Assembly: GCA_002269645.1 (NCBI GenBank) | Contig: NIVC01000690.1 | Location: 1 to 64,000, forward strand | Direction: 5' to 3' | Source: Macrostomum lignano | Taxonomy: Eukaryota | DNA: 64,000 bases | Shown: positions 1-60,503 of the stretch, one piece after another | Position numbering within the stretch: position 1 is the first letter of the stretch | How the letters are laid out: each line of letters starts with the position of its first letter | Program-made: the position numbers and the translations under genes | Notes under the pieces: model-generated | The model's database searches: none | Told to the model about the DNA's origin: nothing | The model's input: only the letters and a program-made list of their open reading frames with translations

Positions 1-3000
1 TCTGATCTCGCCGCTGCATCCGTCATTTGGTTCACTTGCTGCTCACAAGCCGCAGCAGCAGCAGCCGCTATCCGTGCAGGCAGTCAGTCTCTTTGTGAAT
101 TTTCTGGTGGATCTGAAGAAAACCCGTCCGGCACAGGATTAAAGAGAAAGAGACGATCTGTTTTGGGTGAGTATTATCTGCTGTAGAAGTATTGTACACC
201 AGAGTACTTGTGTTACTTGGTAGAGCACAATTCAAAAGCAATGCAACAATCTCAGTGGCATTGTTGGGACACAAGCTACAAACGCATTGAATAGTAAACA
301 CAGCCCAGCCTAGCTCAAGGCTAGTAATTTGTTGGGCATTTATTGGGACATTGCAGCCAGGCCTATTTTTTGAACAGCATTTGTTGGGTCGCACTTATTG
401 GGACAATACTGATTCTAATCGCGACTACTTCTGAGTTCTGACTTTTCAAAACAGACCCAGCATTAGTTGAACACGTTCTATTAAAGGGTTCCTTTATAGC
501 CTATTAATGATTACTAAAGCAAGCCTATCTTAATTGATTTCTTTTCCTCGCAGATTCTGAAGTCAGCCACGCCAGCGACATGCCTAAGAGACAAGAATGC
601 GCTTTAACGATCAGCAGCGAGCATTCTGATCTCGCCGCTGCATCCGTCATTTGGTTCACTTGCTGCTCACAAGCCGCAGCAGCAGCAGCCGCTATCCGTG
701 CAGGCAGTCAGTCTATTTGTGAATTTTCTGGTGGATCTGAAGAAAACCCGTCCGGCACAGGATTAAAGAGAAAGAGACGATCTGTTTTGGGTGAGTATTA
801 TCTGCTGTAGAAGTATTGTACACCAGAGTACTTGTGTTACTTGGTAGAGCACAATTCAAAAGCAATGCAACAATCTCAGTGGCATTGTTGGGACACAAGC
901 TACAAACGCATTGAATAGTAAACACAGCCCAGCCTAGCTCAAGGCTAGTAATTTGTTGGGCATTTATTGGGACATTGCAGCCAGGCCTATTTTTTGAACA
1001 GCATTTGTTGGGTCGCACTTATTGGGACAATACTGATTCTAATCGCGACTACTTCTGAGTTCTGACTTTTCAAAACAGACCCAGCATTAGTTGAACACGT
1101 TCTATTAAAGGGTTCCTTTATAGCCTATTAATGATTACTAAAGCAAGCCTATCTTAATTGATTTCTTTTCCTCGCAGATTCTGAAGTCAGCCACGCCAGC
1201 GACATGCCTAAGAGACAAGAATGCGCTTTAACGATCAGCAGCGAGCATTCTGATCTCGCCGCTGCATCCGTCATTTGGTTCACTTGCTGCTCACAAGCCG
1301 CAGCAGCAGCAGCCGCTATCCGTGCAGGCAGTCAGTCTATTTGTGAATTTTCTGGTGGATCTGAAGAAAACCCGTCCGGCACAGGATTAAAGAGAAAGAG
1401 ACGATCTGTTTTGGGTGAGTATTATCTGCTGTAGAAGTATTGTACACCAGAGTACTTGTGTTACTTGGTAGAGCACAATTCAAAAGCAATGCAACAATCT
1501 CAGTGGCATTGTTGGGACACAAGCTACAAACGCATTGAATAGTAAACACAGCCCAGCCTAGCTCAAGGCTAGTAATTTGTTGGGCATTTATTGGGACATT
1601 GCAGCCAGGCCTATTTTTTGAACAGCATTTGTTGGGTCGCACTTATTGGGACAATACTGATTCTAATCGCGACTACTTCTGAGTTCTGACTTTTCAAAAC
1701 AGACCCAGCATTAGTTGAACACGTTCTATTAAAGGGTTCCTTTATAGCCTATTAATGATTACTAAAGCAAGCCTATCTTAATTGATTTCTTTTCCTCGCA
1801 GATTCTGAAGTCAGCCACGCCAGCGACATGCCTAAGAGACAAGAATGCGCTTTAACGATCAGCAGCGAGCATTCTGATCTCGCCGCTGCATCCGTCATTT
1901 GGTTCACTTGCTGCTCACAAGCCGCAGCAGCAGCAGCCGCTATCCGTGCAGGCAGTCAGTCTCTTTGTGAATTTTCTGGTGGATCTGAAGAAAACCCGTC
2001 CGGCACAGGATTAAAGAGAAAGAGACGATCTGTTTTGGGTGAGTATTATCTGCTGTAGAAGTATTGTACACCAGAGTACTTGTGTTACTTGGTAGAGCAC
2101 AATTGAAAAGCAATGCAACAATCTCAGTGGCATTGTTGGGACACAAGCTACAAACGCATTGAATAGTAAACACAGCCCAGCCTAGCTCAAGGCTAGTAAT
2201 TTGTTGGGCATTTATTGGGACATTGCAGCCAGGCCTATTTTTTGAACAGCATTTGTTGGGTCGCACTTATTGGGACAATACTGATTCTAATCGCGACTAC
2301 TTCTGAGTTCTGACTTTTCAAAACAGACCCAGCATTAGTTGAACACGTTCTATTAAAGGGTTCCTTTATAGCCTATTAATGATTACTAAAGCAAGCCTAT
2401 CTTAATTGATTTCTTTTCCTCGCAGATTCTGAAGTCAGCCACGCCAGCGACATGCCTAAGAGACAAGAATGCGCTTTAACGATCAGCAGCGAGCATTCTG
2501 ATCTCGCCGCTGCATCCGTCATTTGGTTCACTTGCTGCTCACAAGCCGCAGCAGCAGCAGCCGCTATCCGTGCAGGCAGTCAGTCTCTTTGTGAATTTTC
2601 TGGTGGATCTGAAGAAAACCCGTCCGGCACAGGATTAAAGAGAAAGAGACGATCTGTTTTGGGTGAGTATTATCTGCTGTAGAAGTATTGTACACCAGAG
2701 TACTTGTGTTACTTGGTAGAGCACAATTCAAAAGCAATGCAACAATCTCAGTGGCATTGTTGGGACACAAGCTACAAACGCATTGAATAGTAAACACAGC
2801 CCAGCCTAGCTCAAGGCTAGTAATTTGTTGGGCATTTATTGGGACATTGCAGCCAGGCCTATTTTTTGAACAGCATTTGTTGGGTCGCACTTATTGGGAC
2901 AATACTGATTCTAATCGCGACTACTTCTGAGTTCTGACTTTTCAAAACAGACCCAGCATTAGTTGAACACGTTCTATTAAAGGGTTCCTTTATAGCCTAT

Positions 3001-5670
3001 TAATGATTACTAAAGCAAGCCTATCTTAATTGATTTCTTTTCCTCGCAGATTCTGAAGTCAGCCACGCCAGCGACATGCCTAAGAGACAAGAATGCGCTT
3101 TAACGATCAGCAGCGAGCATTCTGATCTCGCCGCTGCATCCGTCATTTGGTTCACTTGCTACTCACAAGCCGCAGCAGCAGCAGCCGCTATCCGTGCAGG
3201 CAGTCAGTCTCTTTGTGAATTTTCTGGTGGATCTGAAGAAAACCCGTCCGGCACAGGATTAAAGAGAAAGAGACGATCTGTTTTGGGTGAGTATTATCTG
3301 CTGTAGAAGTATTGTACACCAGAGTACTTGTGTTACTTGGTAGAGCACAATTGAAAAGCAATGCAACAATCTCAGTGGCATTGTTGGGACACAAGCTACA
3401 AACGCATTGAATAGTAAACACAGCCCAGCCTAGCTCAAGGCTAGTAATTTGTTGGGCATTTATTGGGACATTGCAGCCAGGCCTATTTTTTGAACAGCAT
3501 TTGTTGGGTCGCACTTATTGGGACAATACTGATTCTAATCGCGACTACTTCTGAGTTCTGACTTTTCAAAACAGACCCAGCATTAGTTGAACACGTTCTA
3601 TTAAAGGGTTCCTTTATAGCCTATTAATGATTACTAAAGGCAAGCCTATCTTAATTGATTTCTTTTCCTCGCAGATTCTGAAGTCAGCCACGCCAGCGAC
3701 ATGCCTAAGAGACAAGAATGCGCTTTAACGATCAGCAGCGAGCATTCTGATCTCGCCGCTGCATCCGTCATTTGGTTCACTTGCTGCTCACAAGCCGCAG
3801 CAGCAGCAGCCGCTATCCGTGCAGGCAGTCAGTCTATTTGTGAATTTTCTGGTGGATCTGAAGAAAACCCGTCCGGCACAGGATTAAAGAGAAAGAGACG
3901 ATCTGTTTTGGGTGAGTATTATCTGCTGTAGAAGTATTGTACACCAGAGTACTTGTGTTACTTGGTAGAGCACAATTCAAAAGCAATGCAACAATCTCAG
4001 TGGCATTGTTGGGACACAAGCTACAAACGCATTGAATAGTAAACACAGCCCAGCCTAGCTCAAGGCCAGTAATTTGTTGGGCATTTATTGGGACATTGCA
4101 GCCAGGCCTATTTTTTGAACAGCATTTGTTGGGTCGCACTTATTGGGACAATACTGATTCTAATCGCGACTACTTCTGAGTTCTGACTTTTCAAAACAGA
4201 CCCAGCATTAGTTGAACACGTTCTATTAAAGGGTTCCTTTATAGCCTATTAATGATTACTAAAGGCAAGCCTATCTTAATTGATTTCTTTTCCTCGCAGA
4301 TTCTGAAGTCAGCCACGCCAGCGACATGCCTAAGAGACAAGAATGCGCTTTAACGATCAGCAGCGAGCATTCTGATCTCGCCGCTGCATCCGTCATTTGG
4401 TTCACTTGCTGCTCACAAGCCGCAGCAGCAGCAGCCGCTATCCGTGCAGGCAGTCAGTCTCTTTGTGAATTTTCTGGTGGATCTGAAGAAAACCCGTCCG
4501 GCACAGGATTAAAGAGAAAGAGACGATCTGTTTTGGGTGAGTATTATCTGCTGTAGAAGTATTGTACACCAGAGTACTTGTGTTACTTGGTAGAGCACAA
4601 TTGAAAAGCAATGCAACAATCTCAGTGGCATTGTTGGGACACAAGCTACAAACGCATTGAATAGTAAACACAGCCCAGCCTAGCTCAAGGCTAGTAATTT
4701 GTTGGGCATTTATTGGGACATTGCAGCCAGGCCTATTTTTTGAACAGCATTTGTTGGGTCGCACTTATTGGGACAATACTGATTCTAATCGCGACTACTT
4801 CTGAGTTCTGACTTTTCAAAACAGACCCAGCATTAGTTGAACACGTTCTATTAAAGGGTTCCTTTATAGCCTATTAATGATTACTAAAGGCAAGCCTATC
4901 TTAATTGATTTCTTTTCCTCGCAGATTCTGAAGTCAGCCACGCCAGCGACATGCCTAAGAGACAAGAATGCGCTTTAACGATCAGCAGCGAGCATTCTGA
5001 TCTCGCCGCTGCATCCGTCATTTGGTTCACTTGCTGCTCACAAGCCGCAGCAGCAGCAGCCGCTATCCGTGCAGGCAGTCAGTCTATTTGTGAATTTTCT
5101 GGTGGATCTGAAGAAAACCCGTCCGGCACAGGATTAAAGAGAAAGAGACGATCTGTTTTGGGTGAGTATTATCTGCTGTAGAAGTATTGTACACCAGAGT
5201 ACTTGTGTTACTTGGTAGAGCACAATTCAAAAGCAATGCAACAATCTCAGTGGCATTGTTGGGACACAAGCTACAAACGCATTGAATAGTAAACACAGCC
5301 CAGCCTAGCTCAAGGCTAGTAATTTGTTGGGCATTTATTGGGACATTGCAGCCAGGCCTATTTTTTGAACAGCATTTGTTGGGTCGCACTTATTGGGACA
5401 ATACTGATTCTAATCGCGACTACTTCTGAGTTCTGACTTTTCAAAACAGACCCAGCATTAGTTGAACACGTTCTATTAAAGGGTTCCTTTATAGCCTATT
5501 AATGATTACTAATGCAAGCCTATCTTAATTGATTTCTTTTCCTCGCAGATTCTGAAGTCAGCAACGCCAGCGACATGCCTAAGAGACAAGAATGCGCTTT
5601 AACGATCAGCAGTGAGCATTCTGATCTCGCCGCTGCATCCGTCATTTGGTTCACTTGCTGCTCACAAGCC

Positions 5671-5712
<42 letters not shown>

Positions 5713-5736
5713 GCTATCTGTGCAGCAGTCAGTTAA
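1..5736 (+). repeat. 624/625-bp tandem array, 8 complete units plus a partial first unit (array runs off the window) and a divergent terminal unit
   Basis: The same ORF start recurs at 580, 1204, 1828, 2452, 3076, 3701, 4326, 4951 and 5575. Units differ by only a few SNPs and one 1-bp indel. Confidence 0.98.
1..5736 (+). CDS. Putative tandem-exon repeat protein (79-aa unit with poly-Ala and a KRKRR NLS-like motif), 5' end outside the window
   Basis: Each unit has TTTTCCTCGCAG| and G|GTGAGT, giving exons 554-790, 1178-1414, 1802-2038, 2426-2662, 3050-3286, 3675-3911, 4300-4536 and 4925-5161 (237 nt, phase 1-1, no stops). Terminal exon from 5549 ends in TAA at 5734-5736, with AATAAA at 5857. 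No homology recognised and no expression evidence. Confidence 0.35.
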
Positions 5737-5940
5737 TTCATGAGTTTTTTGGCGGAGCTGGTTATTTTTTTAATTTTCTGAATCGAGAAGCCGATTAACT
5801 GCTGTGTGCTTCACTGGAATATTATTTAGAGGACGCATTTTTTGCAGTCTGTTTCTAATAAAATCCGGTGCAATGACCGCGGTAGAGCTCTAGCATTTGC
5901 TTTTTATAGTATTTGTGTATATTCTTTTTCAAGCTATGCT

Positions 5941-6187
5941 GGAATTGTTGGGACAGCCCTATCCACACTGGCTATGGTGGAATTGTTGGGACAGCCCTTT
6001 CCACACTGGCTATGGTTGAATTGTTGGGACAGCCCTATCCACACTGGCTATGGTGGAATTGTTGGGACAGCCCTTTCCACACTGGCTATGGTTGAATTGT
6101 TGGGACAGCCCTATCCACACTGGCTATGGTGGAATTGTTGGGACAGCCCTATCCACACTGGCTATGGTGAAATTGTTGGGACAGCCC
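5941..6187. repeat. 38-bp minisatellite, about 6.5 copies
   Basis: Unit GGAATTGTTGGGACAGCCCTATCCACACTGGCTATGGT starting at 5941, 5979, 6017, 6055, 6093, 6131 and 6169. Confidence 0.95.
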
Positions 6188-8317
6188 CATACTATAGTGT
6201 GTGCTGGCTTCTGCTATAGTGTGGTTCATTTCCGCATCCTTTTACGTAGCATTCTGTGGGTCCGAATAGCTGACATGTACCTTTTGAGTAATTCTAGTGA
6301 TTGTGTCATAATCAATAAAGTACATTTTTATGAACAGTGGAGTTTCGCTACAGAATTGTTTTTTCCCAGTGGCACTAAATGTAGCAAATTTTGTTTATTC
6401 AGATCGTAAAATTTTTTTGATATGTGTCAATGTCGTTTGTCTTCGATAACCTTAAAGTCCCTTGCCATTTACCATCCTGTCTTCTATAATCTATGATCGC
6501 TGAAATTATCTGGTGAAATTTGACGCGCTGATATTATTGCCTTAGTGGAATTCAGCAAGACACCAGGGTTTTTTAATTCTGTTTTAGACAAGTATACATG
6601 TACAATCTGTTGTGAGTTCAATGCACCTCGAAAAATGCTTTCCAACTGTTTTCAGTAAGCCAAAAGCATGTTGTCAATAAAAATCTATTTGGTGGGTTGA
6701 AAATTGCCTGTGTGGGGACGTGTGTGTGTGTGATTTTTCGTGTGTCGGAGCAGTCCCAATATGTGCAAGTTTTTGCACACTTGGCCAATAAGTGCCTCGT
6801 GCACGTTTGTGTGTGTGTGTGTGTGTGTCTTCTTTGACGGACAGGCAAGTGGCGTTGTTTGGGGTGGATGGATTCGGGAGGGGGGTTAGCTGACAGGCAC
6901 TGCTAAGCAAATGCTTCTGCAACCAGCCTGGAGTGTTTGTGTGTGGTGTGGAGTACCCTAGTGTGAAGAGCTGCAGGGGCTGAGCAACTGAGCAACTGAG
7001 CAACTGAGTAGATTGCGGGGTGCCTAAAGCCTAACAGTGCCTAATACCGCACAGAGAGAGAGAGAGATTGTCTTGAGCTGTCGAAGCTTTATAGCTGATT
7101 GCTGCTGCTGCTGCTAAGACCAAGATTGCTTTATAATAGAAGAGTATAAAACTGAGCTTATAGGCTCTAAGGAGGGGTGTGAGAGCGGAGGTGGAGGGGA
7201 ATTTCGGCAGGCAGTGTCGACCAGGCGCTTGTCTGCGCGCGCTCGGTGTGGTGGTCCTCTTCTTTTTCTCTTTTGCTGACGTCTCTCTCGGTTAAACAAA
7301 TTTTGCTGCTCTTCAAATTTCTTCTTCTGGCTATGGCTCAATACTGCTTGATTATTATTATATCTCTTTATAAGTTATTAGAGACTTCGATTAGTTAGGG
7401 TTCGCAACTGCAGACTTGCGCCTCGGTCTGCTGAACTATGTGAAATTTCGTAGCCTTTTTCGACCAAATCTTCCTACTTGCTTCCTTCGTCCCACTAGCC
7501 AGCTCCCTGCTTTTATATCATTTTCCCAATGAAAAAAACCTCATTCTCTCTTCTCTTTCTAGCTCTGCCTCTGCCCTGCTTCACTCCTCTCGACTCTCGC
7601 TCCTCAATTCAGAACCAATTGTTGTAGAAAATTAGGCCCAAGGCCATATACAGACAGACCCGCGGTCAAGTCGAGAGAGAACTTCAAGGCAGGAGAGTGT
7701 CGGTCGGTCGGTCGGGCACACAGACAGGAGGGGAACTCAATTTGAGCTAGGCGGGGCATGACTGTGCTTTTCGAAAATGGTTCGGCAGATATAAGAAGCA
7801 GAAATAAAAAAAAGAATTTTCCTCCCTCCCTCCTAAGAGAGAAAAAGCAACTGGCACCGCGGGGATGGACCTTGCTGGCTTGCCCCGAAAAAAAAGCATC
7901 AATCAGAGGCAAGGACTTTCTTTTCTCGACTGGCCAGAGAGCTTCCAACAGAAAATACAATCACTTAGATCAATAAGGAGGAAGCTGATTATATTAGTGG
8001 ATACGCCTGGAACTGCCAAACTTGGGGTGTGCCGTGGGACTGGGGGTCCAACAGGCTAGTTAGTTAGCTTGGTATAAAGAGGATTTCGAGGGAAAAGGGA
8101 AAAGAAACGATCCTACCGTCTTTAAATCTACTTGCGATAGAGAAAATCGTATAAAAGTTATATTGAACTAGTTTAAAATCCGATTAAATTTGCGGCGTTT
8201 TACTACTTACTAGTAGGACATTTTGGAATTTCGATGGCACCAATTCGTAGGAATTAAGTGTTGTGAATCTTTTAAGGGAATTTTTATTAAATTTAAGTTT
8301 ATAAGTCAGAGAAAGAA

Positions 8318-11465: not shown

Positions 11466-11812
11466 ACCGACTCTCTTCTCTGACAACCGACCCTCTTCTC
11501 TGACAACAGACTCTCTTCTCTGACAACCGACTCTCTTCTCTGACAACCGACTCTCTTCTCTGACAACCGACCCTCTTCTCTGACAACCGACTCTCTTCTC
11601 TGACAACCGACTCTCTTCTCTGACAACCTACTCCCTCTTATCAGGCAACAGACTCTCTTCTCTGACAACCGACTCTCTTCTCTGACAACCGACTCTCTTC
11701 TCTGACAACCTACTCCCTCTTATCAGGCAACAGACTCTCTTCTCTGACAACCGACTCTCTTCTCTGACAACCGACTTTCTCTTCCCTGACAACCGACTTT
11801 CTCTTCCCTGAC
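11466..11812. repeat. 20-bp minisatellite
   Basis: CCGACTCTCTTCTCTGACAA repeated. Confidence 0.93.
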
Positions 11813-13428: not shown

Positions 13429-15294
13429 CAGATTTGTCTAGTTTTTTAATCCTGTTTACATGCAGTACGTCATGACGATAACCTTATTTAGCCAGGCTGT
13501 TTATTGTCAGTTGTGATCTGTGTTATTTTTATGATTATCGATCTGGTATTATCGGTAAAGCAGACTAAAAACACAGTAAACCTATATCAGAATTTTTCAG
13601 GTGTTGTTCTCGCAGCTTTTTTCATTTCCTATTATTCTTATGTAGGAACAATATTAGCAAAGAAATTGTTATGCAGTTATTACTTAGTTAGTACCCAGAT
13701 TATTGCATTAGAAAATCTGCAACGGCCAAAATGCAACAGACAGCAACGTCAGAAGCGGATCAATGCCGCCCCCCCCGTCCTACTGGCCTGTTGCTTCAGA
13801 CTATAATCCATTTTTTCGATCTGGCGCCTTCATGTATATGCAGTATAATGCTTAGCTTCACCAAGATCCTGCTGTTGCCTCTGCTACCTTTGAGCTGCGA
13901 TTTCTTCCTAATACTGTCTGTCTTTTTCTTCTTTTTTTCTTCTGCTTTTGCTATGCTAGCCCCGCCCAACGGCTAAATGTCTAGATGGCTTATTTTTAAC
14001 CTCGAAGCCAACAATAGCATACGTATAAAGCTTTTTATATGCCTATAAATAATCAGCACGAACAATAGCTTTATATAGGAGGGGCAACACGTGTGACAAG
14101 CGACGCAGGAATCTACTAAAATCTTCCTCAATAATAAAATCCCCCGGGCGGTAAGGGAGGCAGCGTTTTCCTGAGCTCTTCGTGGATTAAACTGCTTCGG
14201 CGGATTAATATAAGTGAAGCAGAATTCTGTGGTGGGGGGAGTTTCCTCTGTTATTCCTGCTTTCCAATCCTGTCAGGCATGCCGCAACGCGCCCCACCCC
14301 TCACCGTCTCCCTACCTGCAAGTCCGGCAAGTCTATTGCAGCCACTGCAGATTCGGGGGGGAACCGGATTAAAAAATCTCTCCTATACTGCATTATGCTT
14401 GTTATAGTCTCTCTTCCCGAGGAGATTATTAGGTTTCCCTTATCCTAATTCATACTTATAGGTAGAGAAAGAGAGAGAGAGAGAATGGCTTGTGTCAGAA
14501 AAGATTTGCCCAGCTGTGCTAACTGGCTGAAACTACTACTACTACAATAGTGGTAAAGTGCCCGCGTATCTACGGCTCCTAATATAGCAGAGCCGCGACG
14601 TTAATTTCAGAAGAAGAGGGCTTGTTCTGTAGTCTGATTATCTTGTAATTAGTTTTTATACTTTGTTTAATCTTCCGCTTTAACCACTCTCTCACCCTTG
14701 ATATCTTTTCTCCCCCATTTCTACTTCTCTTCCTTACTCCTCCTCTTTGCATCTCCGTATTTCCCCTTTTCCCATCTTCCTTCTCCACTAATCATAAGGT
14801 TTCCAGGGTCTCACCATCCCAGCGTTGGTCTATCCGTCTTTCTTTATACTTTTCTTCTAGCATTCAATAATTAGGACCCCTCATCCTCTTTGCAGGTGGG
14901 CTTAATTACCATCATCATCTTCTGAAAAATGTGTCCGACGCCTCGACAGCAAATAAGACGATGTCAGGGAAACGCACATTCTCTCGCAATACAGTTAGTT
15001 GCTTAGGGCATATTTTCTCGTACTAGAATGATGCATCGGTACGACGTATTCTAATGCATTCTGCGTCAGACTACGACTGGGTACGGGCACTGTAATTATG
15101 ACTTGTTTTTCGTCATCCTGCTCTGCATGAAATGCCCTGATTTCCAGGTTCGGAGAGTCAAATTAGGGATTGTGGGGACCCTGGAGGGGGAAGGTGAACT
15201 AGTCCTTCAGTGACTGGAGAGACTAGAAAGAGGCAGTCCTAAAGTATTGAAAGATGTGAGTAACAAGATCTGCTTTAGACGAAACTAGCTCGCA

Positions 15295-17621: not shown

Positions 17622-17968
17622 TGACTGACTGACTGACTGACTGACTGACTGACTGACTGACTGACTGACTGACTGACTGACTGACTGATTGACTGACTGA
17701 CTGACTGACTGACTGACTGACTGACTGACTGACTGACTGACTGACTGACTGACTGACTGACTGACTGACTGACTGACTGACTGACTGACTGACTGACTGA
17801 CTGACTGACTGACTGACTGACTGACTGACTGACTGACTGACTGACTGACTGACTGACTGACTGACTGACTGACTGACTGACTGACTGACTGACTGACTGA
17901 CTGACTGACTGACTGACTGACTGACTGACTGACTGACTGACTGACTGACTGACTGACTGACTGACTGA
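17622..17968. repeat. (GACT)n microsatellite
   Basis: Near-perfect tetranucleotide run. Confidence 0.98.
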
Positions 17969-20423: not shown

Positions 20424-23400
20424 CTTGCCCCCCTGTCCTGGCTTTCTTGGCACAGCAACTTTCGGATCGATCTGAAATGTCAACACAGATGCAATTGATT
20501 AGTTTTAAAATAGAATAAGCTTCAAAAGTAGACAAAATATTTTGAGCATAAAAAACCACATTAACTACTACTTTATTGTCCCAGAGCTCTGCAGCAGAGC
20601 CGGACTAGACTGTTAAAAAAACACTTGTACATCATAAAATTTAAAGAATAGTTACACTCTGCAGTGCCTCTTTGTCTCACAATTTTTCCACGTCAAACCA
20701 TGCCACTCTCCTCTCCACTCTCCCTCTGCCATCTCGTTCAATCCGACACAACACATTCACCCTTCTTCTCATACAAAATTTATGCAGTTTGAGACTTTGC
20801 CAGCTCATTAACTGAGTCCCTTAAAGCCCCCCCGCTCTGATGAAGCGGTTAACGAAAAAAACTCTTCAATCCTTGATGAAGCAGCCTCTCGCTTTTTTGT
20901 GTGCCAGGAAAGTTTCTGAGCACATTTCCCTGTAGGGAATTCAAATTACCAGTTGTATTACTCAGATCTGCAGCTCAGCCAACGCCTCAGCTAATCTCTA
21001 CTGTTATAGCGCTTTTGAGATTTACAAGGCTGCCAATTTTATTATCAGTGCAATTTAGATGCAGCCTAAACTAAATAACCCTTTAATCCTTTGCTAAAAA
21101 TTATACGATGTACCACAGGGCTGGACTGGAAAAGTCTACCATCTGTTACATGAGGATCTGCTCAAATTACTCAATCCGTTCTACTCCCTTTCTCTACTGT
21201 GTTCCCCTGCCTCTGTCTGGACTGTCTTTACTTCTTCTTTCTATATAGTATTCTCTGCATCACCTCGTCTCCCCTTTTACCTGGCCTACAGATGGGCCGT
21301 CTACCCCCCTGTATTTCCTCATCCACCGCGCTCCCCTCGCCCGGATACAGTCTCGCCTCAAATTTTCTACCGCAACTACCCCTCCCACTCTCTCTCTGTC
21401 TCTCTGTCTCACCCCGCCTTCCTTTTTCCCTTTGCCCGCCTCCTCAAATGCGAGAGGGGGGGGGGCACAGATGCAGCGAGCGTCACTTTCTTTTCTCTCT
21501 GCCCCTCACACGGCCTCATCTTCTCTGCTTGCCGCCGGAGGGAAGGCGGGGCAGCAGGCGGCTTGTTCTAAAGCAGCAATCTGGGATAGGAGGGGCGGAG
21601 TTCCTTTCTAACAAGGTACGCCGAATTGCTGCTGCTGCTGACGATGAAGTTTTCTGACAAAAAAAACTCGACACAAATTCAACTAACTATGGGAGGAGAC
21701 CGCCTGCGGCCATGGCTACATAGGAACCCTGGAGACTCATGCACAGCACAAAATCTACAGATATATATATATGTGTAGGCCTTTTGGAAGGGGAGATTTA
21801 GCCGCGAGGAATCTTCTCGTCTCTTTTTTTCCTTCATCAAAGCCGAATCGAGGAGGGATAGGCCGGCCTAACAGAAGTCTAGCCTTAGGGCCTAGGAAAA
21901 CTCGGAGTCTGCAAGCTTCATCTGTCCCCATCGTCTGCAGAGCTGCAGTAGAGAGAGAGAGTCGCTACTCCCGCTTGTTGCAGGCATTGAGTTTGATTTT
22001 CACTGTTGGGCTCCTCAAACTTCCTTCTTCCTGCATAGCTGCTGCCGTTCTGCCGTGTGTGTGCTGACAAAATACACACCCGAACTCCCCCCCTGCCTCG
22101 CTAGATACACAACGAGAACGAGCGACGTCCAGCCTTTTGCTGCTTCAGTAAACTTTGACTATTCCTGCATCTTCTTCTGCCCCCTTTCTGTTAGCTGTTG
22201 GCTTTGCTTCCGCACAGTTTCTCCCTAAAACCTCGCTTTCCCACCTTTACACTTCATTCTATATAGTCAAGCCAAAGCCTCAGAAATCCCCCAGGAAACT
22301 CTGAAATATGCCAGTTACTTTTTCCTGAGTCCTTTTCCTTTCGATTTTTTTTCAGATCAGCCTCCTCCTACAGGAACAGGTGGCTGAGTGACTCGCGACT
22401 ACAAATGCTTTCTATAGAACCCCATTTTCAACCCACTTTCTCTATCCTGAAGTTTGCTACTCTCAACAACGGAATTTAGCAGGGGATCAAGGAAGTCAGT
22501 TGACTCCTCCACTCTCCCAGGAACTCCCAGGAACCGTGAGAGTATAGTGACCAAACATTTTTCTTGCAATAGCTGGGCGAGAAACTTCGTTGGAGCTCCT
22601 ATCTCTAAACGGTATATTCGGTACATATTAGAAACTGGTAAAATTCATTCAAGAGCTCTATATCAGTTCAATGCATTCTGCAATACAATACGCCTTCGCT
22701 TCTGTGCCAACGTTTTGAGGACTGAGTTACGCGAGCTTTGTGTGCTTAAGAAGTGTTTGCTTAAATGCTTATGCATCAACGCGACGCAGTACAGTAATGC
22801 TGTTGAAGCTCCATCTAATACTCTCGATTATTGACATACACAGTGTAATAGAACGGTTGGTAAACGTCAAGAAATCTTAGAGTAGTTAAGAAAAGTATTA
22901 ATAAACGAGCATAATACCTTTTTAGACTCGAGAAAGTGTGGCGCGCTTTCCAACACTCTGTCAACGCTGCCGGGGTCAGCGAATGTGACGAAGCCAAAGC
23001 CTCTGGAGAGCGGGAGACAATGAATAGGATAGCATTTGCTTTTCTTTGCACATTACAATCTTCTGTCAGATCTTGTCTTCGAAAAAGCTCCTAAAACTGC
23101 AGCAGCAGCAGATGCTTAAAGTCACACGCTTCTAAAACCTCGAGATGGCATCGCAGCTCAAGCATCAGACCTGTGCACACCTTAACCCCCGGCTTCCTCT
23201 CCGCATGTGTGGTCCGCATAAAATTTCGATGTTTGGTTTGTAAAATATAATGTAATTTGATATATGGGGGGTTCGTTTTTGAGATTTTCTAAATTCAAGG
23301 AAGCCAAGAAAGTATATAGACAGGGAAATGACGATATTTCTTAGTTGCATACATTATACTAGGGAGGAGAAGCTATAAAGAGTGATTTAGGGTTGAAAGA

Positions 23401-27127: not shown

Positions 27128-29779
27128 ATGTTTCGCAACCAGTACGACCATGACGTCATCATATTTAGTCCCCAGGGTCGAATCCATCAGATTGAGTACG
27201 CTATGGAAGCTGTGAAACAGGGCTCAGCCACTGTTGGAGTGAAAAATGGCACCCATGCCGCTCTGGTTGCGCTTAAGAGAGCGCCATCTGAGTTGTCTTC
27301 CTTTCAGAAGAAGATTATACCAGTGAGTTTTCTGCATATCTATGAAGACTAGGGATTTAATTTAATAGCTGTTATGTGAGTCGTATAGAGTTAGAAGCCA
27401 TGCCCTAGAAACTAGAGCTCGAATTTTTTTACTTTAAAATACTGACCCTCAGAAGCCTGACCCTCTAAAAGCCAGACCCTCAGAAGCCTGACCCTCAGAA
27501 GCCTGACCCTCTAAAAGCCAGACCCTCTAAAAGCCAGACCCTCAGAAGCCTGACCCTCTAAAAGCCAGACCCTCAGAAGCCTGACCCTCAGAAGCCTGAC
27601 CCTCAGAAGCCTGACCTAAAAGCCCGACCCTAAGAAACCTGACCTTTAAAAGCCTGAGCCTCAATAGCCTGACCTTTAATAGCCCGACTCTCAGAAGCCT
27701 GAACCTAAGAATCCTAACCCTTAAAAGCTTGAAACTAAAAATCCTGACCCCCAGAATCCTGACCTCCAGAGCCTGACCCTAAGAATGCTGACCTCCAGAG
27801 CCTGACCCTAAGAATGCTGACCCCCAGAGCTGACCATAAGAATCCTGACCCTCAGAGCCTGACCTAAGAATCCTGACCCCAATAAGCTTGATCTTCTGCA
27901 GTTGCAATTAAACATACAAAACATCCCAGAAACTAGTCATTATTATCCCGCTCTCCAAATTCAGATTGACAGTCACATTGGCGTATCGATCGCCGGACTG
28001 ACAGCCGACGGTCAAGTACTAAGCCGTTTCGCTCGAGACGAATGCTTCAATCATCGTTGGGCCTACGACAGCGCCCTGACTGTTAGCCGTTTAGTTGATA
28101 ATTTGGCTTCGAAATTGCAGGTACCAACTCAGGTGTACGGTAAGCGACCGTTCGGAGTTGGACTGCTGATTGCTGGCTTTGATATTGGCATTGGGCCGCG
28201 CGTCTTCTACCAGTGCCCGTCTGCTAACTATTACGATTGCAAATCTATCGCTATTGGGGCCAGATCGCAGTCTGCTAGAACTTATCTGGAGGGTAAACTG
28301 GACGAGATTGCTGCCACGAAAACGCCCGAGGAGCTGATCAAGTATGTGTGCTGCGATTTGTTTGACAATCTGCAAATGTTTTGCTGTTAGTTGTCTATCC
28401 TAGTTCTGTAGTAGATTTTGTCTGTCTACCTTAGCTCTGTAGTAGGTTTTGACTGTCTACCTTAGTTCTGTAGGAGGTTTTGTCTGTCTACCTTAGCTCT
28501 GTAGTAGGTTTTATCTGTCTACCTTAGTTCTGTAGGAGGTTTTGACTGTCTACCTTAGTTCTGTAGTAGGTTTTGTCTGTCTACCTTAGTTCTGTAGGAG
28601 GTTTTGACTGTCTATCCTAGTTCTGTAGTAGGTTTTGTCTGTCTACCTTAGTTCTGTAGTAGGTTTTGTCTGTCTACCTTAGTTCTGTAGTAGGTTTTAT
28701 CTGTCTACCTTAGTTCTGTAGGAGGTTTTGACTGTCTACCTTAGCTCTGTAGTAGGTTTTATCTGTCTACCTTAGTTCTGTAGGAGGTTTTGACTGTCTA
28801 CCTTAGTTCTGTAGTAGATTTTGTGTGGCTACCTTAGTTCTGTAGTAGGTTTTGTCAGGCTACCTTAGTTTTGTAGTAGGTTTTGTGTAACTACCTTAGT
28901 TCTGTAGTAGGTTTTGTGTGGCTACCTTAGTTCTGTAGTAGGTTTTGTCAGGCTACCTTACCTTAGTTCTGTAGTAGATTTTGTGTGGCTACCTTAGTTC
29001 TGTAGTAGGTTTTGTCAGGCTACCTTACCTTAGTTCTGTAGTAGATTTTGTGTGGCTACCTTAGTTCTGTAGTAGGTTTTGTCTATCTACCTTAGTTCTG
29101 TAGTAGGTTTTGTCTGTCTACCTTAGTTCTGTAGTAGGTTTTGACTGTCTACCTTAGTTCTGTAGTAGGTTTTGTCTGTCTACCTTAGTTCTGTAGTAGG
29201 TTTTGACTGTCTACCTTAGTTCTGTAGTAGGTTTTATCTGTCTACCTTAGTTCTGTAGTAGGTTTTGACTGTCTACCTTAGTTCTGTAGTAGGTTTTGAC
29301 TGTCTACCTTAGTTCTGTAGTAGGTTTTGTCTATCTACCTTAGTTCTGTAGTAGGTTTTGTCTATCTACCTTAGTTCTGCAGTAGGTTCTTTAGTGAGTA
29401 GAATGTTTCTATTTCTAGTATTTCTAGTAGTACTTTTTGTATTATTTCTAATACATCGTACAGGGCAATAAGTGTCTCAAATTAAAATCATGCTCCGTCT
29501 GCCCTCAGACACGGTCTAATTGCTCTGCGCAACACCCTGCCTAACGAGATGGAGCTCAGCGTCAAGAACTGCTCAGTAGCACTCGTTGGCTCCGATATAG
29601 ATTTCACCGTCTACGAAGACTCAGCTGTTGAGCCATATTTGGCTTTGATTCGCGAGGAGCCGTCGGCGGGCGCCGCCGACGATGGTCAACCGTCGACACA
29701 GTCGACTTCGGGCGATGGTGCCGCCGGCCCTGGCAGCAGCGGAGCCGCCGAAGGCGAGGTTCGGATGGAGGAGGCGTAA
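27128..29779 (+). CDS. PSMA1: 20S proteasome subunit alpha type-1 (alpha 6)
   Basis: Exons 27128-27322, 27965-28341 and 29509-29779 with consistent phases. Motifs [60 protein letters not shown] and [11 protein letters not shown]; acidic C-terminal tail. Confidence 0.95.
27445..27885. repeat. 15-bp minisatellite, PSMA1 intron 1
   Basis: CCTGACCCTCAGAAG and variants. Confidence 0.9.
28392..29388. repeat. 31-32-bp minisatellite, PSMA1 intron 2
   Basis: CTACCTTAGTTCTGTAGTAGGTTTTGTCTGT repeated about 31 times. Confidence 0.95.
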
Positions 29780-30968: not shown

Positions 30969-43356
<12,388 letters not shown>

Positions 43357-47070: not shown

Positions 47071-47210
47071 TTAGCACTTCTGCTTTTCTCTCGTAGCTAG
47101 AGAAAATTTCCTAACCATTGACAGTGAGGCAAATAATGTAGCCGTCAATTCAATCCACTATTTATTGTTTGCATGCTAGCAAACAATCGAAACTCAATCC
47201 AAGCCGAGCA

Positions 47211-47612
47211 ATGCCCGCCCCAGACAAAGAAGAACAGAAGCGTCAAAAAGCCGAATTAGAGGCTCGCTATCGAGCTAAACAAGAGTTGATAACTGGCGGT
47301 GCAAAGTCTAAACAGCCGCAGGCGTTCCTGCCTCCGCCTGACGCTCTGTCGCGTGATTTAGCTAGCGGCGTTGGCGACACAAGCCAAGAGCGGCCTACTG
47401 GCATCAATCATATTGTGCACAAAATGAAAGAGAATCCTTTAGTGCCGGGCGGTATGCTTCTAACCGTATTCGCTTTGGGCAACGGGTTGCGTTACATGAT
47501 TAAAAGGAATAGCCAAGCTCAGCAGACTATGATGCGATTGCGTGTGTTTGGTCAAGGCTTCACCATGGTGGCTTTGGTTGCTGGCACTGTGTTGCTGGCA
47601 TCTAAGAAGTGA
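47211..47612 (+). CDS. HIGD2A: HIG1 domain protein (HIGD2A/Rcf1-like), single exon, 133 aa
   Basis: KENPLVPGGMLLTVFAL...QQTMMRLRVFGQGFT: two hydrophobic segments and the Q-x3-R-x-R-x3-Q motif of type-1 HIG1 proteins. Confidence 0.85.
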   Translation: MPAPDKEEQKRQKAELEARYRAKQELITGGAKSKQPQAFLPPPDALSRDLASGVGDTSQERPTGINHIVHKMKENPLVPGGMLLTVFALGNGLRYMIKRNSQAQQTMMRLRVFGQGFTMVALVAGTVLLASKK

Positions 47613-50322: not shown

Positions 50323-52800
<2,478 letters not shown>

Positions 52801-53765: not shown

Positions 53766-53819
<54 letters not shown>

Positions 53820-53856
53820 AACTACTACTGCTACTACTACTACTACTACTACTACA

Positions 53857-53914
<58 letters not shown>

Positions 53915-53916
53915 AC

Positions 53917-53967
<51 letters not shown>

Positions 53968-53968
53968 G

Positions 53969-54015
<47 letters not shown>

Positions 54016-54016
54016 G

Positions 54017-54054
<38 letters not shown>

Positions 54055-54059
54055 GCTAC

Positions 54060-54119
<60 letters not shown>

Positions 54120-54124
54120 AACTA
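53751..54124. repeat. (CTA)n trinucleotide microsatellite
   Basis: Direct reading. Confidence 0.98.
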
Positions 54125-55077: not shown

Positions 55078-56577
<1,500 letters not shown>

Positions 56578-57328: not shown

Positions 57329-57949
57329 CTAGCTGCGGGTGACAGATTGCGCTCTAAAGCTGCAAATTGCAGCATCAAAGGATCCAGATCGAAGGAAAGC
57401 GTTGCAAATGCTCTTCATGATAAGATTGGCGGCATGAAAGGCTTTATCATTTATTATGTCAATCGCTCGCAACTTCATAATATGGCGAAACAAACCAGAT
57501 CGGACTCCAACCACAGTGTTTGGTAAATAGAAGGAACCGTCAGACTTCCTCAATCCAGCATAAAAGTACCTCACGAATTTAGCTATATCATCCACAGAGG
57601 CAACTTTGAGATCTAGTTGTACACCATTGTCAGTCAGAAACTTCTCGAAACGACCGACGGAAGCCAATTCCTTTGCAATGGTTGATTGACACTGATTCTC
57701 ACGTTCAACTTGCTGAGCAAGGCTCTCCAGTTCATCCAGACTTGCATTCGACATCGGGTCAGTCGCTAGCAGCTTCTCTAAATCGGCGTCAGCAATTGCA
57801 TCCAACATGGGCAGCAGCCATTCGTTCTCTCTTTCCCACTTGCTAGAAATGGCTGCAATTGCCACCTCTTCGGATGACAAACCGTCGACGGTTGCGTATC
57901 GCATGTCCATAAGCGGAGGAAGAATCGACGGCTTGATTAGAGAAACCAT
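57329..57949 (-). pseudogene. Truncated Crypton/DUF3504-type tyrosine recombinase-like fragment (core-binding region only)
   Basis: FVRYFYAGLRKSDGSFYLPNTVVGVRSGLFRHIMKLRAIDIINDKAFHAAN matches the recalled RKxDGxxYxPxT...GLxRH...DIxxDxxF pattern of Crypton/KCTD1/ZMYM/QRICH1 proteins. The ORF stops inside the left TIR before any catalytic domain. Confidence 0.6.
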
Positions 57950-58249
57950 TGCTTTGTTTTTATGGTGGCAACTAGCTTTCAATTGTAATCTCCTTTCGTT
58001 ACCCCCTCCCCTCACCATCTCCAGCGTGCAAACCTCCTTTTTTGGGCAGAATGTAAAATTTAAGAATCAAATAAGAATAAGATTCATGCACGCGCACTCG
58101 TGCTTTTGCCAATGACGCACTCGTTAGCGTTCAAGAATCCTAACAGTCTACCCTGCAATCCCTCTGCTTAATCAGTCTTTAAGCAAATCAGTTTAACAAT
58201 TGGCACAAGTTAACCATTCAGTATGCTAAATTTTGCTAAAAAACACAAG

Positions 58250-59722: not shown

Positions 59723-60503
59723 TAGTTTAACAATTTGTGTGCGCTGTAGGTGGGAAAATAATTATCAAGAAAGTGCACTCAATAGTCTACTTGCTCAGAT
59801 CCTTGAGTCCTTGTTTGTATTAAAATTCTTCAATAATGGTGAAGTGCAATTCCACAGACATTGCAAAGGACGAACGCTGTTAGCTTAATGCATAGCAAAT
59901 TTTGTTTATATGCTCTTAGAAATTGATTGATTGCACATGAATTCATCATTCTGTGATAGAAGTACTTTGATTAGCCTAGGTTTTTTTCTAACTACGAGCG
60001 TAGTTACTATCTGAGAAACTATATGGCGTAATTAATAATTAATTTAATGTAGTAGTTAATCAGCTGATATATTTAGCTCTGAATCAGTAAAGGTGCTATT
60101 TCATTTACTCTAGGCTTATCTATATCGTAAACATTGTAATGTAAAATAGCTCCTACTAATGCTTAGTTGTTCTTAACTTAGCACATTCTTCATTTTGAGT
60201 TACTGAGGGCAGAGTGGGGCCACATGGGATTGCGATCCTGCTGCTGCTGGGCACCCTCCAGCAGTCACATGGCTCTGGCCTCGGTGTATATCTTATGTTA
60301 TTGTGTCCCTAGCGTATTGGCTGCTAGTGTTTATCATTGTCATGATTACTCTTAGTAACTTGCAGTTCCACCGCTGCTCTGCTTCCATTCGCAGTGGGTG
60401 CAGGACTTTCGCGACAAAGTGATGCTGGAGGATGAGTCTCGCATACCTGTTGTACTTCTGGCTAATAAGGTGAGTGCGGGCTGTCTGTCTGTCTGTCTGT
60501 CTT

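What the first reader, a model, noticed from the sequence alone, without database searches (positions are those of the whole stretch)
1..5862. A satellite that is built like a gene: tandem array of in-frame, splice-competent exons ending in a stop exon and poly(A) signal
Seen: every 624/625-bp unit has a strong acceptor (TTTCTTTTCCTCGCAG|) and donor (TTGG|GTGAGT) bounding a 237-nt exon. The exon is phase 1 at both ends (G+AT = Asp), so the exons chain without stops into a 79-aa repeat: DSEVSHASDMPKRQECALTISSEHSDLAAASVIWFTCCSQAAAAAAAIRAGSQS(I/L)CEFSGGSEENPSGTGLKRKRRSVL. The only length polymorphism (AAAG/AAAGG) is intronic. The last unit loses a G, giving TAA at 5734-5736, expands poly-Ala from 7 to 16, and is followed by AATAAA at 5857. 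Inference: a lineage-specific repeat protein with one NLS-like KRKRR per unit whose length is set by array copy number or exon skipping.
Basis: partly seen in the sequence, partly recalled or inferred. Interest (0 to 1): 0.72.

Follow-up and report, generated by a model that had tools for sequence, protein, structure and literature searches.

The report
Spliced exon array inside a transposon
The 624-bp repeat really is a chain of splice-ready, in-frame exons, but it is the tandem-repeat core of a mobile element found at ten or more places in the flatworm Macrostomum lignano genome, and its 'protein' shows no sign of being maintained by selection.

Summary
Window 1-5862 holds 9.4 units of 624/625 bp. 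Each unit has a 237-nt phase-1/phase-1 open exon bounded by TTTCTTTTCCTCGCAG| and TTGG|GTGAGT. The last unit ends in TAA (5734-5736) and AATAAA (5857).

The organism is the flatworm Macrostomum lignano. The array is not a gene locus. It is the variable-copy core (7 to 19 or more units) of a dispersed element with a 2.46-kb left arm and a 1.07-kb right arm (ending at window ~6808). The element always sits in the same orientation inside a (GT)n microsatellite, with unrelated DNA beyond. I recovered 11 copies.

Transcript-derived NCBI models (family Mlig029855) use exactly the predicted junctions, so splicing is real.

Coding constraint is absent. Exon and intron carry equal variant densities (0.074 vs 0.072). 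Only 3 of 15 exon substitutions are synonymous (neutral expectation 22.5%). 45 of 130 exon copies elsewhere are frameshifted or stopped. Database "proteins" mix two reading frames, and no homologue exists outside this species.

Best reading: a transposon-borne, spliced but neutrally evolving exon-intron satellite. A functional protein from intact arrays such as this one is not excluded (about 15%).

The parts
1..5548 (+). Tandem array of 624/625-bp units (0.9 partial + 8 full). It runs off the left edge of the window.
   Evidence: spacing 624/625 bp, ~99.5% identity, 6 variable columns.
1..166 (+). Partial exon of the first unit in the window, cut by the window edge, with donor TTGG|GTGAGT at 163-172.
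554..790 (+). First full 237-nt exon. The others are at 1178-1414, 1802-2038, 2426-2662, 3050-3286, 3675-3911, 4300-4536 and 4925-5161. Phase 1 at both ends, open, with an internal ATG at 580.
   Evidence: translations; (GACATGCC at 577-584).
791..1177 (+). First full 387/388-nt intron, repeated in each unit. It has GTGAGT at its 5' end, three TTGGGACA motifs, ATTAAA, TACTAA 41 nt before the AG, and a 13/14-pyrimidine tract followed by CAG.
5549..5736 (+). Terminal ('stop') exon. It is a diverged edge copy of the unit, homologous to about exon position 186-200, with a one-G deletion, 16 Ala codons and TAA at 5734-5736.
   Evidence: In copy L002 the G is retained and the frame runs 15 codons further.
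5857..5862 (+). AATAAA poly(A) signal, 121 nt after the stop. It is conserved in the right arm of the other copies.
5737..6808 (+). Right arm of the element (~1.07 kb), shared at 91-99% identity with the copies in L001, L002, L004, L005, L006 and L010.
5933..6187 (+). 38-bp minisatellite (6.7 copies) inside the right arm. Each copy carries the AATTGTTGGGACAGCCC motif.
6753..6759 (-). The single inverted copy of the TTGGGAC motif, near the right terminus.
6763..6778 (.). Short palindrome GTGCAA-GTTT-TTGCAC near the right terminus.
   Evidence: Its fold energy is not exceptional (z = -0.7).
6780..6804 (-). Right terminal inverted-repeat-like sequence. Its reverse complement GTGCACGAGGCACTTATTGGCCAAG pairs imperfectly with the left terminus GTGCATTAGGCATTTCTTGGGACAAG of complete copies.
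6809..6828 (+). (GT)10 microsatellite abutting the right terminus. The same arrangement is seen at every copy. Unrelated DNA follows.

Best explanation
Window 1-6808 is the right-hand part of one copy of a multi-copy, non-autonomous mobile element of Macrostomum lignano. Complete copies are 8.0-9.9 kb. They consist of a 2.46-kb left arm without long ORFs, a central tandem array of 7 to 19 or more units of ~0.63 kb, and a ~1.07-kb right arm. The right arm carries the terminal exon, AATAAA and a 38-bp minisatellite. The ends are imperfect inverted repeats. They share a TTGGGAC(A) motif that recurs three times per unit and in each minisatellite copy. These are probably binding sites for the enzyme that moves the element (inferred). 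Every copy lies in the same orientation within a (GT)n tract. This points to site- and orientation-specific integration (shown as a pattern; the mechanism is inferred). The repeated unit is an 'exon + intron' module that was amplified by unequal exchange and kept near-identical by concerted evolution or recent expansion (inferred from ~99.5% identity within an array against 1-7% divergence between arrays). RNA from such arrays is made and spliced exon to exon (shown indirectly by transcript-derived gene models), and it probably ends at the element's own poly(A) signal (inferred). The 79-codon open frame is most likely a relic or by-product, for example of a captured terminal coding exon, and not a maintained protein. 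It currently evolves neutrally.
For: (1) Dispersed element. Eleven copies were recovered on 11 contigs (window, L001-L014). They have the same arms and abrupt loss of homology at the same nucleotides: left ...gtt|TGTGCATTAGGCATTTCTTGGGAC, right ...AATAAGTGCCTCGTGCACG|ttt(gt)n. DNA beyond is unrelated. Three copies are complete: L001 9,863 bp, L002 8,024 bp, L004 9,367 bp. One lies antisense within a TIR-domain gene model and one in sense within a myosin gene model. (2) Orientation. All 9 independent loci with a readable junction have GT/TG-rich flanks on the element's + strand and never AC/CA. The two-sided chance is ~0.004. (3) Motif. 34 of the 35 + strand TTGGGACA copies in the 64-kb window lie in 1-6830. 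One sits at the left terminus and one inverted copy near the right terminus. (4) Splicing. P0008 and P0004 equal the genomic sequence spliced at the predicted sites. P0002, P0028 and P0035 use the same junctions. The annotation derives from RNA-seq and a de novo transcriptome. (5) No coding constraint, 112 units. Substitution variants are 15 in 204 exon columns against 28 in 387 intron columns (0.074 vs 0.072, Fisher p = 1). Synonymous changes are 3 of 15 against a neutral expectation of 0.225. Nucleotide diversity is 0.0080 in the exon and 0.0044 in the intron. Using only variants shared by 2 or more units gives 7/204 vs 13/387 (p = 1) for substitutions and 3/204 vs 11/387 (p = 0.40) for indels. 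Omega <= 0.2 is rejected (P = 0.002). (6) Broken copies. Of 130 exon copies, 85 are intact, 36 frameshifted and 9 stopped. A TGG>TAG nonsense change is shared by 11 units of L003. Only 2 of 11 arrays are intact throughout. (7) Frame mixing. Database models read the same DNA in frame 0 (SDLAAASVIWFTCCSQAAAA) and frame +1 (SILISPLHPSFGSLAAHKPQQQQ), joined by alternative sites (GGCA|GTCAGT, AGCAG|CGAGC, ACCC|GTCCGG). One model retains the intron. (8) Orphan peptide. No Pfam domain reaches threshold for a single or double unit. All hits among 5.8 billion and 1.84 billion proteins are M. lignano repeat-only models, apart from one spurious PKD protein.
Against: The exon is open, exactly 3n long and phase-symmetric, which is roughly a 2% coincidence for random sequence. 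A second subfamily (P0054), only 42/80 identical, is also open through three units with nearly the same unit length. This hints at past or weak constraint. However, only open variants can be seen in protein databases. The power of the selection tests is limited (15 exon variants), and omega ~0.5 cannot be rejected. Many frameshifts are single-base deletions in a PacBio-based assembly, some in homopolymers, and may be assembly errors. The nonsense substitution and the substitution-based tests do not suffer from this. Mobility is inferred from multiple loci. No empty site, target-site duplication or autonomous partner was found. The inverted-repeat similarity of the ends was not tested against shuffles. 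Which genomic copies are transcribed is unknown. The window's own array is fully intact, and it fits the 7-Ala transcript model P0035 exactly, better than the locus where that model is annotated.
Confidence: 0.68

Rival explanations
1. A real, lineage-specific repeat-protein gene, carried by or nested in the element. Intact arrays such as the window's would be translated into a modular protein whose length follows exon copy number. Each module has a hydrophobic stretch and an RKRR motif, so the product could be a nuclear protein (NLS) or a secreted polyprotein cut at RKRR by a furin-type protease. Broken arrays would be pseudogene copies.
For: An open, 3n, phase-symmetric exon. The window array (8/8) and L011 (6/6) are fully intact. 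The diverged subfamily B also stays open. Spliced transcripts exist. The transcript-derived model P0035 matches the window exactly. UniRef labels some models 'Secreted protein'. Omega ~0.5 is not excluded.
Against: Exon and intron have equal variant density, the synonymous fraction is neutral, and a nonsense allele has spread over 11 units. 9 of 11 arrays are interrupted. Transcripts use frame-shifting alternative sites. Between subfamilies only the exon ends next to the splice sites are conserved, and the middle is not similar above shuffles in frame 0. No start exon or promoter was identified in the left arm. No homologue exists outside the species.
Confidence: 0.15
2. A tandem array of independent mini-genes. 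Each acceptor would receive the spliced leader by trans-splicing. Translation would start at the ATG 27 nt downstream (MPKRQ...), and the RNA would be cleaved after the intronic ATTAAA about 68 nt before the next acceptor. This would be an operon-like polycistron yielding many copies of a ~76-aa protein.
For: 38.8% of M. lignano genes are trans-spliced and ~7% of transcription units are polycistronic. There is an ATG at exon position 27 and an ATTAAA in each intron. Many models begin with MPKRQ. One model reads through the donor (P0042...SVLGEY).
Against: Annotated transcripts join exon to exon across the intron. The donor GTGAGT is intact in 113/113 copies. There is the same lack of coding constraint. 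No trans-splicing or poly(A) data could be examined here.
Confidence: 0.05
3. Not mobile. The copies would be paralogues of a single locus multiplied by the known large-scale duplications of the M. lignano DV1 genome, or by recombination between (GT)n tracts.
For: The assembly is highly redundant, with 180-312 Mb duplicated. L006 and L010 share the same right flank. No empty site or target-site duplication was shown.
Against: Homology stops at the same nucleotide in every copy, and the flanks beyond the (GT)n tract are unrelated at 9 loci in different gene contexts: myosin intron, TIR-domain gene, near a cathepsin gene. Whole-chromosome duplication would preserve the flanks.
Confidence: 0.05

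Closest known systems
Non-autonomous Helentrons (HINEs: DINE-1 of Drosophila, Cg_HINE of the Pacific oyster) that carry central satellite-like tandem repeats
   Same: A dispersed element with conserved left and right modules flanking a variable-number central tandem array in fixed orientation. It has inverted-repeat-like ends, a short palindrome near the 3' end, an association with microsatellites, T residues at the junctions, no evident target-site duplication, and copies inside introns of genes (PMC7492417).
   Different: The unit here is 624 bp (HINE repeats are typically ~100-200 bp). It is a complete exon + intron with working splice sites and an open frame. The arms are kilobases long, not tens to hundreds of bp. 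The palindrome lies upstream of the right inverted repeat, not after it. The microsatellite is outside the element on both sides, not inside the left module. No Rep/helicase partner is known.
Crypton-type (tyrosine-recombinase) integration
   Same: Orientation-specific insertion into a short sequence that matches the element's own terminus, with no target-site duplication (model summarised in PMC9977147). Here the right end ...GTTT(GT)n and the (GT)n target would play that role.
   Different: The element encodes no recombinase, and its ends look like inverted repeats, which Cryptons lack. The only nearby lead is a weak (E = 0.035) SAM-like integrase-domain match in an unrelated ORF at 57329-58018. 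This is an analogy, not a membership.
Gene-fragment capture by transposons (Pack-MULEs, Helitron gene capture) and exonisation of transposon sequence (my knowledge of the field)
   Same: A mobile element carrying what looks like the last intron, last coding exon, stop and poly(A) signal of a gene. It is transcribed and spliced and yields chimeric or 'hypothetical' ORFs in annotations.
   Different: No donor host gene could be found. The captured module has been amplified into a homogeneous in-frame tandem array, which is not a usual feature of captured fragments.
Genes with tandemly duplicated, phase-symmetric exons that encode repeat proteins (my knowledge)
   Same: 3n-long, same-phase exons separated by near-identical introns, so that copy number changes protein length without breaking the frame.
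   Different: Such genes show purifying selection and sit at one conserved locus. Here the array is multi-copy, transposon-borne, neutrally evolving and often interrupted.

Membership tests
Protein-coding gene with tandem exon duplication | Canonical acceptor and donor at every exon, symmetric phase and a continuous ORF | tested here: met
   (window). The donor is intact in 113/113 copies across loci.
Protein-coding gene with tandem exon duplication | Exon-exon junctions present in RNA | tested here: met
   Indirect evidence. The transcript-derived NCBI models P0008 and P0004 equal the genome spliced at these sites, and other models use the same junctions. The annotation method is described. 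Raw reads were not examined.
Protein-coding gene with tandem exon duplication | Purifying selection: exon more conserved than intron, and an excess of synonymous change | tested here: not met
   0.074 vs 0.072 variants per column. 3 of 15 synonymous against 0.225 expected. Omega <= 0.2 rejected.
Protein-coding gene with tandem exon duplication | Reading frame intact in paralogous copies | tested here: not met
   45 of 130 exon copies are frameshifted or stopped, and 9 of 11 arrays are interrupted. Some indels may be assembly errors.
Protein-coding gene with tandem exon duplication | A start exon or promoter, and homologues in other taxa | tested here: not met
   The left arm has no ORF over 90 aa and no similarity to the unit. 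No homologue exists outside M. lignano. A promoter is not testable here.
Transposon-borne tandem repeat (HINE-like organisation) | Many dispersed copies with identical termini and unrelated flanks | tested here: met
Transposon-borne tandem repeat (HINE-like organisation) | Conserved left and right modules around a copy-number-variable central array in fixed orientation | tested here: met
   7 to 19 or more units between the same arms in all copies.
Transposon-borne tandem repeat (HINE-like organisation) | 11-12-bp subterminal inverted repeats, with a palindrome following the 3' repeat | tested here: inconclusive
   Imperfect inverted similarity of ~25-38 nt, not tested against shuffles. The palindrome at 6763-6778 lies before the right repeat, not after it.
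Transposon-borne tandem repeat (HINE-like organisation) | Insertion at TT without target-site duplication, with an empty site demonstrable | tested here: inconclusive
   The junctions read gtt| and |ttt inside (GT)n. A possible 9-bp repeat GTGTGCATG is seen only in L002. The empty-site search failed.
Transposon-borne tandem repeat (HINE-like organisation) | An autonomous partner encoding Rep/helicase (or any transposase) with the same termini | not testable with these tools
   No tool here searches the M. lignano genome by DNA.
Crypton-like site-specific element | Orientation-specific insertion into a sequence shared with the element terminus | tested here: met
   9 of 9 loci have (GT)n on both sides on the same strand.
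Crypton-like site-specific element | Tyrosine recombinase encoded by the element or by a partner, and absence of terminal inverted repeats | tested here: not met
   There is no ORF in the arms, and the ends resemble inverted repeats. A partner is not testable.
SL trans-spliced polycistronic gene array | Spliced-leader addition at each acceptor and poly(A) cleavage upstream of it | not testable with these tools
   Only sequence hints: an ATG 27 nt after the acceptor and ATTAAA ~68 nt before it.

The most novel reading that the evidence does not exclude
A mobile element that carries a copy-number-variable array of splice-competent, in-frame coding modules. Intact copies would make a transposon-encoded modular protein (hydrophobic segment + RKRR per module, so possibly a secreted polyprotein or a nuclear protein). 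Alternatively, copies inserted in sense orientation in host introns would act as natural gene traps that graft these modules and a poly(A) site onto host transcripts. Some UniRef names attached to repeat-only models (UCH, Rho-GAP, BAF250_C, dymeclin) hint at the second case.
Probability: 0.12. Interest if true: 0.7.

Novelty: new variant of a known kind. Interest (0 to 1): 0.4.

Why it matters
First, it is a caution for annotation. One transposon family has seeded at least 16 'hypothetical protein' genes (BOX15_Mlig029855 g10-g16 among them) and dozens of UniProt entries in M. lignano. These entries consist of nothing but this repeat, some read in two frames.

Second, it shows that a satellite-like array can be built from a complete exon-intron module and still be processed by the spliceosome. 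The result is a ready-made, length-variable ORF that is currently neutral, which is raw material for de novo gene birth or for exon shuffling into host genes when the element lands in introns.

Third, the strict (GT)n, single-orientation insertion pattern points to a site-specific integration mechanism that has not been described in flatworms. This could be useful in an animal where transgenesis exists but targeted integration is limited.

Tried and rejected
TRF missed the array because its period cap is 500, so direct dissection was used instead.

Rfam and tRNA scans of the window found nothing.

A guess at the HIG1 protein for locating the window's contig found nothing. P0035 led to another copy, L014, and not to the window's contig. 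The left continuation of this particular array therefore remains unseen, and sister copies were used as proxies.

Pfam hits for the peptide (Bd3614_N and others) were rejected as noise. The one hit just above its cutoff (25.9 vs 25 bits, four-unit model P0001) has no single matched stretch that passes on its own.

P0053 was rejected as a PKD-repeat metagenome protein.

A search for subfamily-B DNA found no copy with a contig, so dN/dS between subfamilies could not be computed. The idea that B's middle is A's +1 frame is only suggestive (25 of 500 shuffles reach the score).

DNA folding of the termini showed only small hairpins with unremarkable energies.

The idea that the arm ends are decayed units got little support. 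Only the terminal exon, to about position 186-200, and the TTGGGACA motif are shared.

A literature search for 'Mlig029855' gave no paper.

Classification as a Helitron, a canonical HINE or a Crypton was considered and not adopted. For Crypton a defining feature was tested and not met; for the HINE organisation the terminal features were inconclusive; and the canonical Helitron end sequences were not seen on inspection of the termini.

Full report
**1.

- There are nine copies of the acceptor TTTCTTTTCCTCGCAG (538 to 5533) and nine of the donor TTGG|GTGAGT (163 to 5158), spaced 624 or 625 bp apart.
- There are eight full exons of exactly 237 nt, plus a partial exon at 1-166.
- In phase 1 the exons translate without stops into the stated 79-aa repeat.
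- The units are ~99.5% identical. Among eight full units only six alignment columns vary: two in the exon, both non-synonymous (C>Y and I/L), three intron substitutions, and the intronic AAAG/AAAGG indel.
- The last unit lacks one G, which brings TAA (5734-5736) into frame. It has 16 Ala codons instead of 7 and is followed by AATAAA at 5857.
- A TACTAA branch-point-like motif lies 41 nt upstream of each acceptor AG.
- TRF did not report the array because its period limit is 500.

**2. Organism and setting**

The rest of the window carries exons of a proteasome alpha subunit, trifunctional GART, a HIG1-domain protein and a Rab-like GTPase, identified by eye from the ORF translations. Their introns are packed with mini- and microsatellites.

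The repeat peptide hits 27 proteins among 5.8 billion, and all named ones are from the flatworm Macrostomum lignano. An exhaustive HMMER scan of 1.84 billion representatives adds only more M. lignano models and one spurious PKD-repeat protein.

Pfam gives only noise. The one hit just over its cutoff (Bd3614_N, 25.9 bits, on a four-unit model) has no stretch that passes on its own. The peptide is therefore an orphan.

**3. The database 'proteins' are made of nothing but this repeat, in two frames**

The retrieved sequences are chains of the unit. Many switch between frame 0 (...SDLAAASVIWFTCCSQAAAA...) and frame +1 of the same DNA (...SILISPLHPSFGSLAAHKPQQQQ...).

The switches occur through alternative sites that I located in the window: donor GGCA|GTCAGT, acceptor AGCAG|CGAGC, and donor ACCC|GTCCGG. 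One model retains the intron (P0042).

The NCBI annotation of assembly Mlig_3_7 was built from RNA-seq and a de novo transcriptome with TransDecoder (PMC5730564). It contains a family 'BOX15_Mlig029855' with members numbered up to at least g16.
- P0002, P0028 and P0035 use the same junctions. They differ only by gaps inside the (GCA)n tract, and one placement of P0028 (L004) also leaves out one unit. This is what is expected if one transcript sequence was mapped onto several loci.
- P0035 is an exact substring of the window's own spliced product. It fits the window better than the locus where it is annotated (L014).

So spliced RNAs of this kind exist. Which copies produce them is unknown.

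**4. The array is the core of a dispersed element**

Looking up the contigs that encode these models gave 14 loci on 10 contigs of GCA_002269645.1. None of them contains the window.
- In every locus the array starts at unit position ~68 and ends within the exon part of a last, diverged unit.
- Homology between loci continues 2.46 kb to the left and ~1.07 kb to the right, then stops abruptly.
- All six left junctions read ...gtt|TGTGCATTAGGCATTTCTTGGGAC.
- All seven right junctions read ...AATAAGTGCCTCGTGCACG|ttt(gt)n. In the window this is 6805|6806, followed by (GT)10 at 6809-6828.
- Beyond the GT-rich tract the flanks are unrelated.

Three copies are complete, at 9,863, 8,024 and 9,367 bp. 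Arrays range from 7 to 19 or more units.

One copy lies antisense inside a TIR-domain gene model, and one lies in sense inside a myosin gene model.

The left arm has no ORF over 90 aa and no similarity to the unit.

The two ends are imperfectly inverted-repeat-like. The motif TTGGGACA is almost confined to the element: 34 of its 35 + strand copies in the window lie in 1-6830. It occurs at the left terminus, three times per 'intron', and once per 38-bp minisatellite copy (5933-6187). A single inverted TTGGGAC sits near the right terminus.

All nine independent loci have the (GT)n tract on the same strand on both sides. Insertion is therefore specific for site and orientation.

I infer a non-autonomous mobile element that integrates site-specifically into (GT)n. 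The repeated motif probably provides binding sites for its (unknown) mobilising enzyme.

**5. Test of coding constraint**

The window's units are too similar to be informative, so I used 112 full units from ten non-redundant arrays.
- Substitution variants: 15 in 204 exon columns (GCA tract excluded) against 28 in 387 intron columns, 0.074 vs 0.072, Fisher p = 1.
- Of the 15 exon variants, 11 are missense, 1 is nonsense and 3 are synonymous. The neutral expectation for synonymous change is 22.5%.
- Nucleotide diversity is 0.0080 in the exon and 0.0044 in the intron.
- Restricting to variants shared by at least two units, to exclude sequencing errors, gives 7/204 vs 13/387 substitutions (p = 1) and 3/204 vs 11/387 indels (p = 0.40).
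- Omega <= 0.2 is rejected (P = 0.002). Omega ~0.5 is not rejected.

Exon integrity:
- Of 130 exon copies, 85 are intact, 36 are frameshifted and 9 carry a stop.
- That includes a TGG>TAG change shared by 11 units in L003.
- Only the window (8/8) and L011 (6/6) are intact throughout.
- Part of the single-base deletions may be PacBio assembly errors. The substitution-based results do not depend on them.

**6. A diverged subfamily**

P0052 and P0054 reveal a second unit type that is 42/80 identical to the first and also chained in frame.

Conservation is concentrated at the exon ends: 12 of the first 13 residues and 10 of the last 10, including KRKRRSVL. The middle is not similar above shuffles in frame 0 (175 of 500 shuffles reach the score). 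It matches frame +1 marginally better (25 of 500).

The exon ends are purine-rich (0.58 and 0.62, against 0.46 in the middle). I infer that what is conserved there may be splicing-enhancer-like sequence, not an NLS.

The fact that subfamily B is open is the best argument for some coding constraint. But only open variants can be seen in protein databases, and its DNA was not obtainable.

**7. Synthesis**

Shown:
- the array and its splice-ready exons;
- its location inside a multi-copy element with fixed termini in (GT)n;
- the use of the predicted junctions in transcript-derived models;
- neutral evolution and frequent disruption of the ORF.

Inferred:
- mobility and its mechanism;
- the role of the TTGGGACA motif;
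- the origin of the unit as a captured or ancestral 'last intron + last exon' module, amplified by unequal exchange and homogenised;
- termination at the element's own AATAAA.

Its functional reading, a maintained repeat protein with one NLS per unit, is not supported, although a functional product from intact arrays such as this one cannot be excluded (about 15%).

**8. Comparison with known systems**

The organisation matches the known theme of non-autonomous transposons carrying central satellite-like arrays: conserved arms around a variable central array in fixed orientation, dispersed, often intronic. Examples are HINE/Helentron elements such as DINE-1 and Cg_HINE (PMC7492417).

The order of terminal features, the size of the arms and the position of the microsatellite do not match, and no Rep/helicase partner is known. 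I therefore do not file it as a HINE.

The orientation-specific insertion into a sequence resembling its own terminus works like the Crypton model (PMC9977147). But the element has no recombinase, and it has inverted-repeat-like ends.

What seems unusual is that the repeated unit is a complete exon-intron module that is spliced and open. I rate it a new variant of a known kind.

**9. Limits**

- No raw reads, proteomics or whole-genome DNA search of M. lignano were available.
- The empty-site attempt failed.
- The left part of this particular copy lies outside the window.
- No step had to be referred.

Noticed in passing
window 57329-58018 (-): A 229-aa ORF with a weak match (E = 0.035, below cutoff) to the SAM-like N-terminal domain of phage-type integrases. 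It may be a fragment of a tyrosine-recombinase element (Crypton/DIRS-like). It ends near a long (GTCT)n tract.
   Followed up: partly
window 27902-28390, 32528-33043, 35888-36286, 38687-39148, 40429-40860, 47169-47612, 51472-51861, 60398-60480 (+): Exons of ordinary housekeeping genes, recognised by eye from the ORF translations: proteasome alpha subunit, trifunctional GART (GARS-AIRS-GART), HIG1-domain protein and a Rab-like GTPase. They show that the window is gene-rich animal DNA.
   Followed up: no
window 8321-64000: The introns and spacers are extraordinarily rich in minisatellites (periods 14-49 bp, up to 104 copies, e.g. 40760-42852) and in tetranucleotide tracts ((GTCT)375 at 55078-56577, (TGAC)87 at 17622-17968). 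There is also a (TAC)120 at 53766-54124. TRF listed 80 rows for 64 kb.
   Followed up: no
P0052 / P0054 (UniProt A0A1I8FV09, A0A1I8HX90); no genomic locus obtained: A second, ~50% diverged subfamily of the same spliced tandem-exon repeat exists in M. lignano. One model joins a subfamily-B exon to a subfamily-A exon.
   Followed up: partly
P0013, P0022, P0023, P0025-P0027, P0051, P0057 (UniRef names): UniRef names such as 'UCH domain-containing', 'Rho-GAP domain-containing', 'BAF250_C domain-containing', 'Dymeclin' and 'DRIM domain-containing' are attached to sequences that consist only of this repeat. These are either mis-annotation or a trace of the repeat being joined to host genes in the older gene set.
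   Followed up: no
L014 ~21080-21650 (NIVC01003988.1): A scaffold gap (run of N) begins right after the terminal exon of that copy. Several arrays also end at contig ends (L003, L008, L011). So these arrays are places where the assembly breaks, and copy numbers are lower bounds.
   Followed up: no
L006 ~11644-11700 and L010 ~14491-14550: Two contigs (NIVC01002364, NIVC01005200) share the same right flank after the element. They are probably the same insertion present on duplicated or haplotype contigs.
   Followed up: no
window 763-1063 region, - strand of each unit (cf. L001 8763-9068): The minus strand of each unit has a 101-codon stop-free stretch that overlaps the exon-intron boundary. It was not examined further and is probably fortuitous.
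   Followed up: no
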